A stretch of 62,628 nucleotides of DNA, counting the filler, from Sminthopsis crassicaudata (taxonomy: Eukaryota): assembly GCF_048593235.1 (NCBI RefSeq). It is 4 parts of 4 records of this genome, joined end to end, with 100 filler letters (N's around TTAATTAATTAA, not from the genome) between each part and the next. Parts side by side here need not be neighbours in the genome. Positions count along the whole stretch, not along the records: positions 1 to 23,805 come from NC_133622.1; 3 more parts are not named here. One strand, written 5' to 3'. This document shows positions 2,401 to 22,699 of the stretch, piece after piece. Each line of letters begins with the position of its first letter. Positions within the stretch are counted from its first letter, which is position 1. The translations under genes were made by a program, and so were the position numbers. Below the pieces are notes generated by a model, which saw nothing but the letters and a program-made list of their open reading frames with translations, did no database searches and had not been told where the DNA came from.

Positions 2401-2456
2401 TAGCGGGGGGCTCCCTGCTTCCAGATCTGCCTTGCCATTGGTGGCATTAAATAAGC

Positions 2457-2883
2457 CCCTTCCTTTCTCTGTGACTCTATTTCCTTCTCTGTAAGACCAA
2501 AGGGGTGGCTCTAAGTCTCTCCTGACTCTATTATTTCAAGCCCTTCAACCTTGGTGTACAATTAGGATCAGAATCACTAAAAGTTCCCCAAGGTCCTGTC
2601 TCGAGTGGCTCTGCCATTAGTCTCCCCCACTGCACTTATGCCCATCTAGCACACCACCTTTCCTTCAGAAAAGCCTCTTCCTTTCTCTGTGACTCAATTT
2701 CCCTCTCTGTAAAACCAAAGAGTTGGCCCTAAGGTCTCTCTTGACTATTACTTGGAGCCCTTTAGCCTTGGTATAAAGCCATGATCGGAATCACTGAAAG
2801 TTCCCCAAGGTCCTGTCTCGAATGGTTCTGCCATTAGTCCGCCCCCAATGCAGTTATGCCCTTCTAGAGCACCACCTTTCCCT
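2457..2883. repeat. Diverged local tandem duplication, two copies of about 215-220 bp
   Basis: ttcctttctctgtgactc...aaagttccccaaggtcctgtctcga...tgccattagtc...caccacctttcc occurs at ~2460-2665 and again at ~2677-2883. Confidence 0.9.
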
Positions 2884-16805: not shown

Positions 16806-17131
16806 CTGGGTGGTGCTGTCCCGAAGGGTGGGGGAGCGGCCCCTCCGCGTGGTGGTGGTGGCCATGGTGGTGGTGGTCTCCATGATGGTGGTNNNNNNNN
16901 NNNNNNNNNNNNNNNNNNNNNNNNNNNNNNNNNNNNNNNNNNNNNNNNNNNNNNNNNNNNNNNNNNNNNNNNNNNNNNNNNNNNNNNNNNNNNNNNNNNN
17001 NNNNNNNNNNNNNNNNNNNNNNNNNNNNNNNNNNNNNNNNNNNNNNNNNNNNNNNNCTTGGAAGGGGCGGCCCTGGTCCCGGCCCCCAATCTTGATGGCA
17101 GCCTGGCTGTTGAAGATGGTCAGCTGACGGC
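16806..17131 (-). CDS. NRXN2: NRXN2 exon encoding the end of LNS6 and the O-glycosylated Thr-rich stalk (326 nt, centre masked by N)
   Basis: 17131-17057 reads (G)[24 protein letters not shown] and 16892-16806 reads [32 protein letters not shown] acceptor, CAG|GTCAGT donor, and the 164 N between them keep the frame. Confidence 0.96.
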
Positions 17132-17929: not shown

Positions 17930-18530
17930 GGCAGGTCAGAGACACAGAGACAGAGGGAGACAGAGAGAGACACAGAGACACAGAGACAGAGACAAAGAGA
18001 GAGAGAGACAGANNNNNNNNNNNNNNNNNNNNNNNNNNNNNNNNNNNNNNNNNNNNNNNNNNNNNNNNNNNNNNNNNNNNNNNNNNNNNNNNNNNNNNNN
18101 NNNNNNNNNNNNNNNNNNNNNNNNNNNNNNNNNNNNNNNNNNNNNNNNNNNNNNNNNNNNNNNNNNNNNNNNNNNNNNNNNNNNNNNNNNNNNNNNNNNN
18201 NNNNNNNNNNNNNNNNNNNNNNNNNNNNNNNNNNNNNNNNNNNNNNNNNNNNNNNNNNNNNNNNNNNNNNNNNNNNNNNNNNNNNNNNNNNNNNNNNNNN
18301 NNNNNNNNNNNNNNNNNNNNNNNNNNNNNNNNNNNNNNNNNNNNNNNNNNNNNNNNNNGAACAGAGAGACACAGAGACAAAGAGAGACAGAGAGAGACAG
18401 AGAACAAAGAGACACAGAGACAAAGAGAGACAGAGACACAGAGAGAGAGAGGGAGAAGGAGAGACAGACGAAGTACAGTGAGACAGATAGAAACACAAAC
18501 AGAGACAGAAAGAGACACAGAGACACCCAG
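17930..18530. repeat. Complex (GAGACA/GA)n low-complexity tract with internal N gap 18013-18358
   Basis: gacacagagacagagggagacagagagagacacagagac... on both sides of the gap. Confidence 0.95.
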
Positions 18531-21283
18531 AAAGAGACTGGCAGGCAGATGGACAAGGGGAGGGAGAGCCCGCCCCTGCCCCCATCCCTCCTCCTCTGAG
18601 CCTTCTCTCGCCCTCGCTCCCTCCTCTCCCCCAGTGCAGGGAGGAGGCCATGGCCTGCCTCCCTCATCCCACGGGCCCGGGCCGGGGGGAGCAGGGCCTC
18701 TGCCCCCCAGATGGAAGCCAAGCACCGACACGGATAAACGTTAAAGGGACCTCACTTTGCTGACAGCCAAGGGCTCCACTTTGCTCCGGGGGCCCCGGCT
18801 GGCCGGGCACACCCCGGGATTCGCACCGGGGGCCGGCCGTTTTGGTTGGTTTTGCTTTTTAACTGATCTGGGGGTCGGTTTAACCCTCTGAGTTTGCTGC
18901 GTTTGTCATTTGGTTTTTAGAAAATCATTTTAATTGTGTTTAAGCTTCGGTTTAAGTCTGGTTTGGGGGTTGGTTTGAGGGGGCGGCGCTGGGGGTGGGG
19001 CGTGTGTTTGGGCCCCCTTCTCCCCCAGTCCTTCAGCTCCTGCGCAGGGGGCGGTTTAAGTCCTGGCTTTAGCCTCTGGTTTAGCTTCTCTTTATAGATC
19101 TGGTTTAGTGTTAGGGTGTCTGCTAGCCCAGCCCACCCCCTAGGGGTCCTGGGCTGAGGCTGGACCAACTTGTGACCCGCTGCTGGTGGTCCCTGCTCAA
19201 GCTCCTGGGGCCAGTCACCCCCCCGCGGTCTCTGTCTCCCACCTTCCTCAGGCACCAAAGCCCTTCTCCCCCCCGGATGGCCTCCCCCTGGCCCGGGTGT
19301 GCTCAGGAAAGCACAAGGGCCCTAAGGCAACAGTCACAGACTCTGCTTTCTCTCCCCTAGTTCTCTCACGTCACTTTTGGGGGGCTCTATTCACCCCACA
19401 TCTGGCCGGGGGTGCCGGACTGAGCTCTCCAGCTGATGCCTCTTATCATAGCCCTGGCTCCCAGGTCAGCAAGGCACTTATCAGCCCATTTCACAGATAA
19501 GAACACTGAGATTCAGAGTCCTTGCCAGGATTGGGTTGGAGCCAGGCCCGCTGACAGCGCTTCCGGCGTTCCCTCCACCATGTCAGAGCCATCTCGCCTA
19601 GGACCCCTGAGAGGGGCTGGGGGCCCAGATCACTCTCTCTCCCTCCACCGGCTGCCCGGCAAGGAGACCTCCGAGGCCCTCAGGTCATCATCTGACAGCT
19701 GGGGAGACCCAGCCAAGCTGAGATTTGCTCAGGTGGGCACGGCTGGCGAGGATGCAGACCCTTCTGACTCACATGCAGTGCTCTGTCCCTCGGACCCTGG
19801 CAGGGGAGATCCTCCCTCACGCTGCGGACCCTTCCATCCCTTTCCTTCTTGAGGGTCGGGCTGCCCCACTCCCTCAGGTCACAAGCCGGCCCGGCCTCAG
19901 CCCGGGCTCTCTCTCGGCCACTGATTCCAGGACGGGGGGTGGCTGACGGAGAGGGGACCCTGGGGACCCGGGCAAAGCTGCCCCGAGGCCCCAGCCGTGC
20001 CCCGTGGCACACTCCTCAAAGGGTTAAAGCTTGCCCAGCTGGAGAGAATCGGCCCAATGGGGGCTCTGCTCGGTGGCTTTTAGTGGTCTCGTTACAGTCC
20101 CTTTAACTTTTGGTCCTGCTGTGGGTTTATCACGTCTGGTTATCGGCTTGTTTAGTCCCCACCGGGGGGTCAGGAAGGGACGGGGGTTTAGTCTGGGGGG
20201 GTCCCCAGTGAACATTTAAAAGCAGAGTTATCAGCTGGTTAAGTGGACTTTTAGCAGCTCTACCTCCCCCTCGAGTTTAGCCTTAAAGGTACAGAGCTCG
20301 CCCTGCCCCTCGCGAGGGGCCTGAAGGTGGGAAGGGGATCACAGAATGGCCGGACTCCGCGCTGGGCCCCCAGTTCTGTCTGCGGCCGGAAGCCTCCTCC
20401 CGCCCAGCTCTGGGCAGTCCCTTCCCTCCTGCACAGCCCCTTCTGTCCTTTCCCTTCACCCCCTCTTGGGACCACCTTCCTACACTGAGGGGGCCAAGGG
20501 GTCCGGGGCTGTCCCTGGGTACGGGTGCAAAGGCAGCAGCCCCTGGGCTTCTCTGGGGAGCTGGGGAACTTCCCTTCAGGAGCCTGAGCCCCGTCACTTG
20601 GCAAGTACTTTCTCTGTGCCAGGCACAGGGGTGCCCCTCCCTCCTCTTCCTCCCCCTGTCCTGCCGTCTTTCTCTCCTTCCAACCCTCTCTGCACCTTCC
20701 CTCTGACCTCTCTCCATTCCCAGTCTCACTCCACTCCTCCCACCACAGTCTGGCTCCTGAGCGTCTCTCTGCCATCATTCTCCCACAAAAACCTGGTTCT
20801 GCTGCTTTCTGTCTCTCCTGGACGGGCCCTGCTGCACCTGGTCCCCTTCCCTGCTGCACCTGCTGCCACATGTCCTGCTTCCCATGGCCCACCTTCACCT
20901 TCCCTGCTCCCCACGGGCCCGGTCCCTGCTGCACCTGGGACACATGTCCTGCTCGCCACAGGCCCGGTCCCTGCCTTCCAGGATCTCCACGTTCAGGGAC
21001 GTGGAATTCTCTGTGCTTTGACCTCCCGTTCTGGGGCAGGAAGAACCTCGTACTGCTCTGTGGAATGGTGGCGGCCGCGGGGGGGAGATCAGTGGCGGCC
21101 CCCGTGCTCAGGCTAGCTGGCCCACTAGGTGGGGGAAGAGCTTCGGGGTCTCCAGGAAGCCTCCTGCGGGTGGGCCCTCCCGGCCCGACGACAGCCCCCG
21201 GACGGAAGCCCAGCGGGGTCATCGGCCACTCTGTCCTTCTCTGGGGAGGGGGTGGGGGAAGAGAGAGCTCTGCACCATTAAGA

Positions 21284-21439
21284 NNNNNNNNNNNNNNNNN
21301 NNNNNNNNNNNNNNNNNNNNNNNNNNNNNNNNNNNNNNNNNNNNNNNNNNNNNNNNNNNNNNNNNNNNNNNNNNNNNNNNNNNNNNNNNNNNNNNNNNNN
21401 NNNNNNNNNNNNNNNNNNNNNNNNNNNNNNNNNNNNNNN
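21284..21439 (-). other. NRXN2: N gap that probably hides the 90-nt NRXN2 AS4 (SS4) cassette exon
   Basis: Inference only. AS4 lies immediately upstream of the [10 protein letters not shown] exon in neurexins, I did not find it in readable sequence, the 156-nt gap is large enough, and its flanks are locally AT-rich islands in a GC-rich intron. Confidence 0.4.
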
Positions 21440-22699
21440 TTTTCTCAGACACGACGAAGTCCCAGTGAATTAAAAGAGTCAATTATTCAGAACTCAGGAG
21501 AATCGAGTAAGCGGCGGTGGCTGGCGGCATCCAACCGGAAGGGGTGGCGGGGAGAGACCCCACGAAAAAAACAAGAGGCTGGGGTTCTGTATCCCTCACC
21601 TCCCGGCCACCTCCCTGGATCTCCCCTCCGAGGCCCTCCCGGGACCCTGGGCGAATGACCCAAACCGAACTTTTGGAAGGAAAGAAAGCCAAGAAACCCC
21701 AAGGAGAAGGGGAGCCGGAAGGTCAAAAGTCAGAGGTTAAACAGATTTAGAAGATGCCCGGATCTTTGGATCTAGGCGCTGCCCCCCGCAGAGTGGGGGG
21801 CTGGGGCAGGGACAGGGGTGTTTAGCGGCTTTAGGTTGGGGGCAGGGGCAGCAGGCAGCCCTGGCCCAGCTGGTTACTGAGTTTAGAGTGGGGTTTAGTT
21901 GGGGGGAGGGTTAAGCGAGGTTTATGCGGCATTTAAGGGGGGCACCCGGCACACAAGTTTACGGTGGGGGGTTATTTCCTCCTCACACCCCAAGGCTCAC
22001 AGAGCAGCCCCAGGCCCAGCTTCCCCTGGGGTCCCTGAGCCTGCTCCCCTCCCATCCACAAAATCCATCGCGCTCGTGCCCCTTTCTCAGTCTCCCCTTC
22101 TCTCCCTCTTGTTTCCTTCCCAACCAAACAGGGACAAGGCCCTCTCCCCGAGCAAGACACGTGGTATAAGTCACTCCATTCCCCAGCCCGGTGCTGCCGC
22201 CCAGACCCCTCCACGTGCCCCATTCTTTCCCCGAATCTCTCCCCTCTTCCCAGCTCTCCTTTCCCCATCTTAATCTCCCGATTTCTCCGCTCTCCCCTTC
22301 CTTCCTCCCCAGCCTCCCAACACCTGCTGAGCTCCCAGCGGCCCCCCTCCTCACCCTCCTCCTCACGTGACAGTTCACTGCTTCAGCCCTCCCAGCCTCT
22401 CTCTGCCCCTCTCTCCAGCTGTCTCCTCCCCTAATTTCCCAAGCCTGCATCCCTCTCCCCTCGCTGTTCCTAAGGCAGCTCCCCATCTGCAGAGCACACC
22501 TGTTCTCCCTACCTCTCCCTGAGGAGGATGGGCGGGGGAGGAGCCCCTCGGGACGAGGGGCATACAGAGACCACGGGTGGGTGGACCTTGGGGGCTTTGG
22601 TCCATGGGTGTCAGTCAGTCAAAGTCTTTACAAGCACCTACTGTGTGACAGCTGGCATCCAAAGGAAGGGAGGCGCTCTGCCCTCCAGGAGTGAGTGTC

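What the first reader, a model, noticed from the sequence alone, without database searches (positions are those of the whole stretch)
18840..21980. Three discrete, strand-biased UWAA motif fields around the presumed AS4 exon
Seen: in very GC-rich intron, TTTA/TTAA on the plus strand (UAAA/UUAA in the pre-mRNA) occurs in three tight clusters by hand count: about 11 sites in 18855-19110, about 11 in 20020-20290 and about 10 in 21735-21965. They are often embedded as GTTTAG or GTTTAAG (CUAAAC, CUUAAAC in RNA), spaced 10-40 nt apart by unrelated G/C-rich spacers, so these are not tandem repeats. Established: the STAR proteins SLM2/T-STAR, SLM1 and Sam68 bind U(U/A)AA as dimers, control neurexin AS4 skipping, and respond to site density. 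The element I know of is exon-proximal. Inference: these distal arrays (about 0.3-0.5 kb upstream, 1.0-1.3 kb and 2.2-2.4 kb downstream of the gap) could be a multi-station STAR platform that loops out AS4, or branch-point-like decoys.
Basis: partly seen in the sequence, partly recalled or inferred. Interest (0 to 1): 0.7.

Follow-up and report, generated by a model that had tools for sequence, protein, structure and literature searches.

The report
UAAA-site fields flanking neurexin-2 AS4
Three short islands packed with the RNA word that SLM2/Sam68 splicing proteins bind really do surround the hidden AS4 exon of a neurexin-2 gene; their sites sit on a hidden 12-base grid, and they may be extra docking fields for those proteins or just old repeat debris, which only cross-species and binding data can decide.

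Summary
Merged TTTA/TTAA sites number 11, 11 and 10 in the three stated stretches, against about 3 in dinucleotide shuffles of those stretches. They hold 32 of the 39 sense-strand UWAA sites in the readable AS4-flanking introns. The strand bias exceeds what base composition explains.

The gene is neurexin-2 on the minus strand. The readable edge of the N run 21284-21439 matches the mouse sequence that follows the published 51-nt SLM2 response element.

One reader claim needs correcting. The sites are not irregularly spaced; they sit on a lattice of about 12.5 nt. Field 1 is a visibly decayed 12-mer array. The core, GGTTTAR (YUAAACC in the RNA), is kept far better than the spacers, which uniform neutral decay of one array does not reproduce.

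The RNA sites are predicted to be unpaired. UAAACCC and UAAA-C20-30-UAAA are published T-STAR/Sam68 ligands.

My best reading, at confidence 0.4, is auxiliary STAR-binding fields born from a tandem array. A neutral relic is almost as likely (0.35). No binding, splicing or cross-species test was possible. Published maps report few such sites around Nrxn2 AS4 in human, mouse and two marsupials. Branch-point decoys and a transposon family are not supported.

The parts
18855..19110 (-). Field 1 (C1). It has 11 sense-strand UWAA sites, about 2.2-2.5 kb downstream of AS4 in the pre-mRNA. It consists of two visibly decayed 12-mer arrays, at 18877-18985 and 19053-19125.
   Evidence: Counts and shuffles. 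Lag-12 autocorrelation z = 4.6. Tandem Repeats Finder period 12 at 18959-18981 and 19063-19108. Unit display. Places 18864-18899 tripped a reads-tool filter and were sent to no search tool afterwards.
20020..20290 (-). Field 2 (C2). It has 11 sites, about 1.0-1.3 kb downstream of AS4. Six of its ten neighbour spacings are 23-28 nt, and no unit similarity is left between the sites.
   Evidence: Spacing test, 96 of 5000 random placements reach the observed value. Lag-12 z is only 2.2 and lags 22-26 show nothing. The uniform-decay model is rejected.
21735..21965 (-). Field 3 (C3). It has 10 sites, about 0.3-0.5 kb upstream of the N run that hides AS4. The spacers are G-rich on the + strand, so C-rich in the RNA.
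   Evidence: Tandem Repeats Finder period 11 at 21906-21928.
21284..21439 (-). The N run. By inference it hides the 90-nt AS4 exon and most of the 51-nt SLM2/T-STAR response element. Its letters were not looked up or filled.
   Evidence: Its low-coordinate edge continues into the sequence that follows the element in mouse. Neither AS4 nor the upstream LNS6 exon is found in readable sequence.
21261..21283 (-). Readable end of the response element and the conserved sequence after it. The RNA sense reads UCUUAAU followed by GGUGCAGAGCUCUCUC.
   Evidence: There is an exact, unique match of the 16-mer taken from the published mouse Nrxn2 mutagenesis primers (primers).
16806..17131 (-). The constitutive exon that follows AS4. 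It is interrupted by the N run 16893-17056. The acceptor AG is at 17133-17132.
   Evidence: The 24 residues translated from 17129-17058 are identical to neurexin-2-beta in PDB 3BOP, E = 1e-10. Sequence. Coordinates.
20280..20400 (.). Arm B of an inverted repeat. In the RNA it lies directly 5' of field 2.
   Evidence: Alignment to the reverse complement of 21167-21283. Self-BLAST E = 0.013. Duplex energy -134.7 kcal/mol against -90 +/- 7 for shuffles, and the best of 85 intron tiles. However, the global fold pairs arm A elsewhere.
21167..21283 (.). Arm A of the inverted repeat. In the RNA it starts right after the response element.

Best explanation
Shown. The three fields lie in the neurexin-2 introns on either side of alternative exon AS4. 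AS4 itself, together with its known 51-nt SLM2 response element, is hidden in the N run 21284-21439. Each field is a 230-270-nt island whose sites sit on a lattice of about 12 nt. The core is GGTTTAR on the + strand, which reads YUAAACC in the pre-mRNA.

Inferred origin. The fields began as tandem arrays of a roughly 12-nt unit made by replication slippage. Field 1 still shows unit similarity. Fields 2 and 3 keep only the cores and their spacing.

Inferred function. In the pre-mRNA the fields are A/C-rich islands, predicted to be unpaired, inside an otherwise GC-rich and strongly paired intron. They display UAAA or UUAA every 12-25 nt. That is the arrangement, (A/U)AA with a partner more than 15 nt away, that dimers of the STAR proteins SLM2/T-STAR, Sam68 and SLM1 bind in vitro with low-micromolar affinity. 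I take the fields to be auxiliary, lower-affinity STAR-binding fields. They would raise the local density of bound protein around AS4 and so favour skipping, either by adding to the exon-proximal element or by letting protein dimers bridge the upstream field to the downstream sites.

None of the following has been shown: binding, any effect on AS4, or conservation in other species.
For: Gene and exon anatomy:
- A 24-residue exon piece is identical to neurexin-2-beta.
- A unique exact 16-mer match to the mouse sequence just 3' of the 51-nt element sits at the edge of the N run.

The fields are real and strand-specific:
- Counts are 11/11/10 against about 3 expected.
- TTTA outnumbers TAAA 27 to 4.
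- The fields hold 32 of 39 sense sites of the flanking introns.

Lattice: R = 0.55 at 12.5 nt, reached by 0 of 2000 random placements.

Core kept better than spacers:
- Pooled over 32 sites, only positions -5 to +1 carry information.
- In simulations of uniform decay of a homogeneous 12-mer array, no substitution level gives both the number of intact sites and the low unit identity. The joint probability is roughly 0.003-0.02 per run.

Accessibility: the predicted unpaired probability is about 0.8 at site bases and about 0.35 in the flanks.

Published affinities (Feracci 2016):
- UAAACCC: 7 uM for T-STAR.
- UAAA-C20-30-UAAA: 1.4-2.1 uM for T-STAR and 4-8 uM for Sam68.
- The Nrxn2 element fragment: 1.1 and 3.7 uM.
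- Field 2's pitch of 23-28 nt equals a linker of 19-24 nt.

Published function:
- Adding a second UWAA cluster upstream or downstream changes the AS4 response (Danilenko 2017).
- STAR dimers have been proposed to loop out RNA.
Against: - No binding, splicing or cross-species evidence could be obtained.
- Whole-intron maps report a 'particularly low overall occurrence' of UWAA around Nrxn2 AS4 outside the 51-nt element in human and mouse. Tasmanian devil and wallaby have few other exon-proximal sites. Motif occurrence is also low within 1 kb in mouse. The fields may therefore be lineage-specific.
- Fields 1 and 2 lie at more than +1 kb. The element has been tested only to +241 nt, and SLM2 eCLIP signal is described within 500 nt.
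- Site density is about 1 per 24 nt, against about 1 per 7-8 nt in the 51-nt element.
- The in-vivo SLM2 7-mer UUWAAAA occurs once, and UWAAUWAA never.
- The share of sites with a partner 20-34 nt away (27 of 32) is only modestly above random placement, about 21.5.
- A 12-nt lattice is what slippage produces without any selection.
- The simulation rejects only a homogeneous array with uniform rates.
Confidence: 0.4

Rival explanations
1. Neutral relics. The fields are decayed remains of one or several minisatellite arrays of about 12 nt, made by slippage in a GC-rich, recombination-prone gene. The UWAA enrichment and strand bias are by-products of the unit GGTTTAR. Any STAR protein they bind has no effect on AS4.
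For: - The 12.5-nt lattice.
- Period-12 and period-11 arrays seen by Tandem Repeats Finder.
- Lag-12 autocorrelation in field 1.
- One-step variants of the core (GTTTG, GTTAT, GTTAC) at lattice positions without a site.
- All three fields share unit and orientation, as expected from a common origin.
- Published maps do not report such fields in human, mouse or marsupials.
- Absolute site density is only about twice my own rough estimate for an AT-rich intron (not a tool result).
Against: - Uniform decay of a homogeneous array cannot give this many intact cores together with near-random spacers.
- AT-rich cores survive in a 60-68% GC intron, where W-to-S bias would be expected to erode them. 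This is an inference.
- The fields lie within 2.5 kb of the one exon in the window known to respond to this motif, and none lies in the other 17 kb.
Confidence: 0.35
2. Fields for another factor. The conserved word is the longer YUAAACC set in A/C-rich or C-rich RNA. The fields could serve proteins that bind CA-rich or C-rich RNA (hnRNP L, PCBP or hnRNP K type), or a DNA-binding factor that reads GGTTTAR, rather than STAR proteins.
For: - The RNA of the fields is 60-69% A+C.
- Besides the UWAA core there is weak conservation of the two C after UAAA (19 and 15 of 32) and strong preference for a pyrimidine before it (28 of 32). STAR KH domains are not known to need either (for the 3-4-nt STAR motif).
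Against: - No specific factor with this word is known to me.
- The invariant part is exactly the STAR motif.
- FOX-, RUNX- and NKX-like matches are only sporadic. This was judged by eye and not tested.
Confidence: 0.12
3. Branch-point-like or QKI/SF1 decoys. The sites would mimic the branch-point word and sequester SF1, U2 or QKI.
For: The natural mouse element next to AS4 does contain CUAAC repeats. STAR relatives SF1 and QKI read ACUAAY (established knowledge).
Against: There is no ACUAAY, UACUAAC or CUAAC in any of the three fields. The recurring word CUAAAC has one A too many.
Confidence: 0.03
4. Copies of one interspersed repeat (transposon) family, or an assembly artefact next to gaps.
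For: The fields lie near N runs. MIR-like fragments lie between fields 1 and 2; I identified these by eye and from memory only.
Against: - Self-BLAST finds no alignment among the three fields.
- There are no tRNA-like or Rfam matches.
- Independent runs from two other studies hold 85-98% of the words of 18600-21283.
- The TTAA-flanked inverted repeat that looked like transposon ends has one arm that is conserved AS4-proximal sequence shared with mouse.
Confidence: 0.03

Closest known systems
The 51-nt UWAA-rich T-STAR/SLM2 response element immediately downstream of Nrxn2 AS4 (Ehrmann 2013, PMC3636136; Danilenko 2017, PMC5397175)
   Same: It lies in the same gene and flanks the same exon. The same U(U/A)AA word is on the transcribed strand. 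It is intronic and multi-site. The published element also looks like a small tandem array (AATT and CTAA repeats in the primers).
   Different: The known element starts 13 nt from the 5' splice site. It is AU-rich with overlapping UWAAUWAA doublets, about one site per 7-8 nt, and is reported conserved since bony vertebrates. The fields here lie 0.3-2.5 kb away, have one site per 12-25 nt in C-rich RNA, have no doublets, and are not reported in other species.
Extended UWAA distributions flanking Nrxn1 and Nrxn3 AS4 and the Stxbp5l exon, which go with joint Sam68/SLM2 control (Danilenko 2017)
   Same: Sites lie on both sides of the exon and over long distances. The density model predicts that more sites make an exon responsive to Sam68 as well as SLM2.
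   Different: Those introns are described as having frequent, spread-out sites. Here the intron is 62-64% GC and the sites are confined to three discrete islands with a lattice.
Synthetic UAAACCC and UAAA-C(n)-UAAA ligands of T-STAR and Sam68 (Feracci 2016, PMC4735526, Table 4)
   Same: The word is the same (UAAACC occurs 9 times in the fields), the linker is C-rich, and field 2's linkers of 19-24 nt fall where dimer additivity appears.
   Different: Those are two-site oligonucleotides measured in vitro. The fields are 10-11-site natural sequences and have not been measured.
Decayed minisatellite, or cryptic simple sequence
   Same: There is a constant period of about 12 nt, Tandem Repeats Finder hits inside fields 1 and 3, and indel-blurred spacings of 9-13 nt.
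   Different: Unit similarity is near background in fields 2 and 3 while the core word persists.

Membership tests
STAR (Sam68/SLM2/SLM1) intronic splicing response element | U(U/A)AA or (A/U)AA words on the transcribed strand, in excess | tested here: met
   There are 11/11/10 sense sites against about 3 expected. TTTA outnumbers TAAA 27 to 4. The gene strand was shown.
STAR (Sam68/SLM2/SLM1) intronic splicing response element | Bipartite arrangement: partner sites separated by more than 15 nt | tested here: inconclusive
   27 of 32 sites have a partner 20-34 nt away, but random placement gives about 21.5. Field 2's pitch of 23-28 nt fits. Requirement taken.
STAR (Sam68/SLM2/SLM1) intronic splicing response element | Position close to the regulated exon (within about 200-500 nt in published cases) | tested here: not met
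   Field 3 lies about 0.3-0.5 kb upstream, which is borderline. Fields 2 and 1 lie about 1.0-1.3 and 2.2-2.5 kb downstream (coordinates relative to the N run).
STAR (Sam68/SLM2/SLM1) intronic splicing response element | In-vivo SLM2 word UUWAAAA, or dense UWAAUWAA doublets | tested here: not met
   UUWAAAA occurs once in 758 nt and UWAAUWAA never. The motif is and the doublets.
STAR (Sam68/SLM2/SLM1) intronic splicing response element | Direct protein binding, and loss of the splicing response on mutation | not testable with these tools
   This needs CLIP, EMSA or FP and minigenes.
STAR (Sam68/SLM2/SLM1) intronic splicing response element | Conservation of site pattern across species | not testable with these tools
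The literature suggests absence in human and mouse.
Tandem repeat / minisatellite | Head-to-tail units with a constant period | tested here: met
   Lattice at 12.5 nt, 0 of 2000 random placements reach it. Tandem Repeats Finder periods 12 and 11.
Tandem repeat / minisatellite | Sequence similarity between units over their whole length | tested here: inconclusive
   Field 1: lag-12 z = 4.6, windowed identity 0.50-0.56. Fields 2 and 3: 0.42-0.44 against 0.36-0.38 for shuffles.
Interspersed repeat (transposon) family | Copies align with each other over most of their length | tested here: not met
   Self-BLAST finds no alignment among the fields at E < 0.05.
QKI/SF1 branch-point-type element | ACUAAY core (UACUAAC for SF1) | tested here: not met
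   There are 0 occurrences in all three fields.

The most novel reading that the evidence does not exclude
In this species neurexin-2 AS4 may be wrapped in a three-station STAR scaffold. Field 3 upstream, the canonical element, and fields 2 and 1 downstream would be bridged by SLM2/Sam68 dimers. A roughly 120-nt intronic stem (21283-21167 pairing with 20400-20280) would help by placing field 2 next to the canonical element. AS4 would then be looped out. The exon would also have shifted from SLM2-only control, as in mouse, to joint Sam68/SLM2 control, which is a natural version of the cluster-duplication experiment of Danilenko 2017.
Probability: 0.1. Interest if true: 0.7.

Novelty: new variant of a known kind. 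Interest (0 to 1): 0.4.

Why it matters
AS4 of the neurexins decides which postsynaptic partners a synapse can bind. Nrxn2 AS4 is the textbook case of an exon controlled by SLM2 but not by Sam68, and this has been explained by the scarcity of UWAA sites around it.

A species that carries three extra site fields around the same exon is a natural test of that density model. If the fields bind STAR proteins, AS4 there should respond to Sam68 as well. It would also show how new response elements are born, namely from slippage arrays whose cores are then retained.

If the fields are inert, they put a limit on how far, and at what density, UWAA sites matter. Either result is obtainable with a single minigene series.

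Tried and rejected
- Reads. There is therefore no expression, junction or cross-species evidence.
- Rfam and ARAGORN found nothing.
- AS4 and the upstream LNS6 exon were searched in readable sequence with remembered peptide probes and published mouse primers. There were no hits, which fits AS4 lying in the N run. The mouse minigene end primers also found nothing.
- Transposon idea. The inverted repeat 20280-20400 / 21167-21283 is flanked by TTAA on both sides and looked like piggyBac-type ends. I rejected this because the arm next to the N run is the conserved sequence that follows the SLM2 element in mouse.
- The second inverted repeat, 19148-19177 / 19877-19906, appears to be two MIR-like fragments in opposite orientation. 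This rests on my eye and memory only.
- RNA-bridge idea. The arms make the best duplex among 85 intron tiles. However, the minimum-free-energy fold of 20015-21283 pairs arm A with purine-rich sequence in the loop instead. An all-against-all tile scan is dominated by CU-rich against GA-rich low complexity. I kept this only as a side note.
- A copy of the response element? I checked by eye whether field 2 is an inverted copy of the response element or the exon. It shows no similarity to the published mouse element beyond the arm.
- Not done on purpose. I did not scan public contig collections with the conserved 16-mer, because hits could be human. The N runs were not filled or looked up.
Full report
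**What the window is.** The piece carries a neurexin-2 gene on the minus strand.
- A 24-residue translation of 17129-17058 is identical to neurexin-2-beta (PDB 3BOP, E = 1e-10). Neurexin-1 chains score lower.
- This exon follows splice site 4. Its acceptor AG is at 17133-17132. It runs to 16806 and is interrupted by the N run 16893-17056.
- The next coding stretch, [27 protein letters not shown], lies at 9572-9492.
- Neither the 90-nt AS4 exon nor the LNS6 exon upstream of it is found in readable sequence.

**The N run was tested first, as asked.**
- Published mouse Nrxn2 mutagenesis primers give the sequence that follows the 51-nt SLM2/T-STAR response element...GATCTTAAA then GGTGCAGAGCTCTCTC.
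- In the window, the minus strand directly after the N run reads TCTTAAT then GGTGCAGAGCTCTCTC.
- The 16-mer matches exactly and only once, at 21261-21276 on the minus strand. The N run therefore begins inside the response element, and AS4 and most of the element lie within 21284-21439.
- In mouse the distance from the AS4 5' splice site to that 16-mer is 63 nt. About 56 nt of intron plus the 90-nt exon (146 nt) must then be hidden, which is close to the stated 156.
- Continuity on the high-coordinate side could not be tested. The readable sequence there has no pyrimidine tract, so the true length may differ.
- I did not fill or look up the hidden letters. The mouse primers were used only to anchor the readable flank.

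- Merged TTTA/TTAA sites number 11, 11 and 10 in the three stated stretches.
- Dinucleotide shuffles of the stretches themselves give 3.5, 3.0 and 3.0, and none of 2000 reaches the observed value.
- No other fixed 250-nt window of the piece exceeds 6 sites.
- Block shuffles of the whole piece give even one window with 10 or more sites in 8 of 300 trials.
- The strand bias is real beyond composition: TTTA 27 against TAAA 4 inside the fields.
- In the readable introns flanking the N run, 32 of 39 sense sites lie in the fields. Two of the other seven sit at the two edges of the N run.
- Runs from two studies other than the possible source hold 85-98% of the words of 18600-21283, so the sequence is not an assembly artefact.

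- Neighbour spacings pile up at 9-13 nt (13 of 29) and 21-28 nt (8 of 29), with two at 36-37.
- Phasing peaks at 12.5 nt with R = 0.55, reached by none of 2000 random placements.
- Field 1 is a visibly decayed 12-mer array. Its lag-12 autocorrelation z is 4.6, Tandem Repeats Finder reports period 12, and units of the form GGTTTAAGTCTG follow one another.
- Lattice positions without a site carry one-step variants of the core, such as GTTTG, GTTAT and GTTAC.
- Field 2 keeps a pitch of 23-28 nt but no unit similarity. Field 3 has a period-11 patch.
- The shared core is GGTTTAR, often preceded by CT. GGTTTA occurs 9 times in the 758 nt of the fields and 3 times in the other 22.4 kb.
- The fields do not align with each other. 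They are not copies of an interspersed repeat.

**Core against spacer.**
- Pooled over the 32 sites, only positions -5 to +1 carry information. The remaining lattice positions are at background.
- I simulated a homogeneous 12-mer array decaying uniformly with indels. No substitution level gives both the observed number of intact sites and the observed low unit identity. The joint probability is roughly 0.003 to 0.02 for each of four runs.
- This is a within-genome version of 'motif kept, spacers not'. It argues for retention of the core.
- It rejects only that simple model. Arrays that were heterogeneous from the start, or unequal mutation rates, remain possible.

**What the RNA looks like.**
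- In the pre-mRNA the fields are 60-69% A+C and read YUAAACC or YUUAAAC.
- Site bases are predicted to be about 80% unpaired, against about 35% in the flanks. The A/C-rich strand has little to pair with. This is a prediction only.

**Comparison with what is known.**
- STAR proteins of the Sam68 group read (A/U)AA, and as dimers they need a second site more than 15 nt away.
- UAAACCC binds T-STAR at 7 uM. UAAA-C20-30-UAAA binds at 1.4-2.1 uM (T-STAR) and 4-8 uM (Sam68). A fragment of the natural Nrxn2 element binds at 1.1 and 3.7 uM.
- Field 2's pitch corresponds to linkers of 19-24 nt.
- A second copy of the 51-nt cluster, placed upstream or downstream, makes Nrxn2 AS4 respond to Sam68 as well as SLM2. 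The same authors and others have proposed looping by dimers.
- These points make binding physically plausible and give the fields a clear predicted effect.

**Points against the STAR reading.**
- The same literature maps whole flanking introns and reports a 'particularly low overall occurrence' of UWAA around Nrxn2 AS4 apart from the 51-nt cluster in human and mouse. Tasmanian devil and wallaby have few other exon-proximal sites.
- A later study finds low motif occurrence within 1 kb in mouse.
- Element function has been tested only up to 241 nt from the exon, and SLM2 eCLIP signal is described within 500 nt.
- The in-vivo 7-mer UUWAAAA occurs once in the fields, and UWAAUWAA doublets never.
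- The branch-point or QKI/SF1 decoy idea fails outright: there is no ACUAAY or CUAAC.

**Verdict.** The anatomy is secure. I put the function at 0.4 for auxiliary STAR-binding fields that arose from a tandem array. A neutral relic gets 0.35, another factor 0.12, and decoys and a transposon or artefact about 0.03 each. The fields would be a new variant of the known Nrxn2 response element: distal, multi-field, in a C-rich context and on a lattice.

**Limits.**
- No vertebrate genome collection was available, so conservation, which is the decisive test, remains open.
- I did not scan public contig collections with the conserved 16-mer, because hits could be human.

Noticed in passing
window 20280-20400 and 21167-21283: This is an inverted repeat of about 120 nt with 62-73% identity. 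In the RNA one arm starts right after the SLM2 response element, and its first 16 nt are identical to mouse. The other arm ends right before field 2, so pairing would place field 2 beside the canonical element and loop out about 770 nt. The duplex energy is -134.7 kcal/mol against -90 +/- 7 for shuffles, but the global fold pairs the first arm elsewhere.
   Followed up: partly
window 17937-18012 and 18359-18570: An (AGAGACAG)n-type repeat lies on both sides of the 346-nt N run. In the pre-mRNA this is a CU-rich tract of more than 600 nt, about 0.8-1.4 kb upstream of the exon that follows AS4. It would be a natural PTB-type binding tract.
   Followed up: no
window 20810-20975: A tandem repeat with periods of 22 and 75 nt. 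In RNA sense it reads CCAGGUGCAGCAGGGA and similar, and lies between AS4 and field 2.
   Followed up: no
window 16893-17056 and 21284-21439: Both N runs coincide with the most conserved sequence: the coding part of the exon after AS4, and AS4 plus its element. Their lengths fit what should be hidden: about 55 codons from my memory of the human protein, and 146 of 156 nt. They may be masks of true length rather than assembly gaps.
   Followed up: partly
window 21449-21505 (+ strand): An exon-like stretch on the strand opposite to neurexin-2: a pyrimidine tract and AG, then a 57-nt open frame, then GTAAGC. It lies in the AT-richer sequence just upstream of AS4 and is probably chance.
   Followed up: no
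window 19148-19200, 19440-19560, 19860-19910: MIR-like fragments lie between fields 1 and 2. I recognised them by eye and from memory of the MIR core. Two of them, in opposite orientation, explain the inverted repeat 19148-19177 / 19877-19906.
   Followed up: no
window 2453-2881 and 2896-2930: A 218-nt tandem duplication (2 copies, 84% matches), followed by a (GT)17 microsatellite.
   Followed up: no
window 18600-21283: Runs labelled as four other organisms hold 11-39% of the sampled 31-mers of this intron stretch.
   Followed up: no
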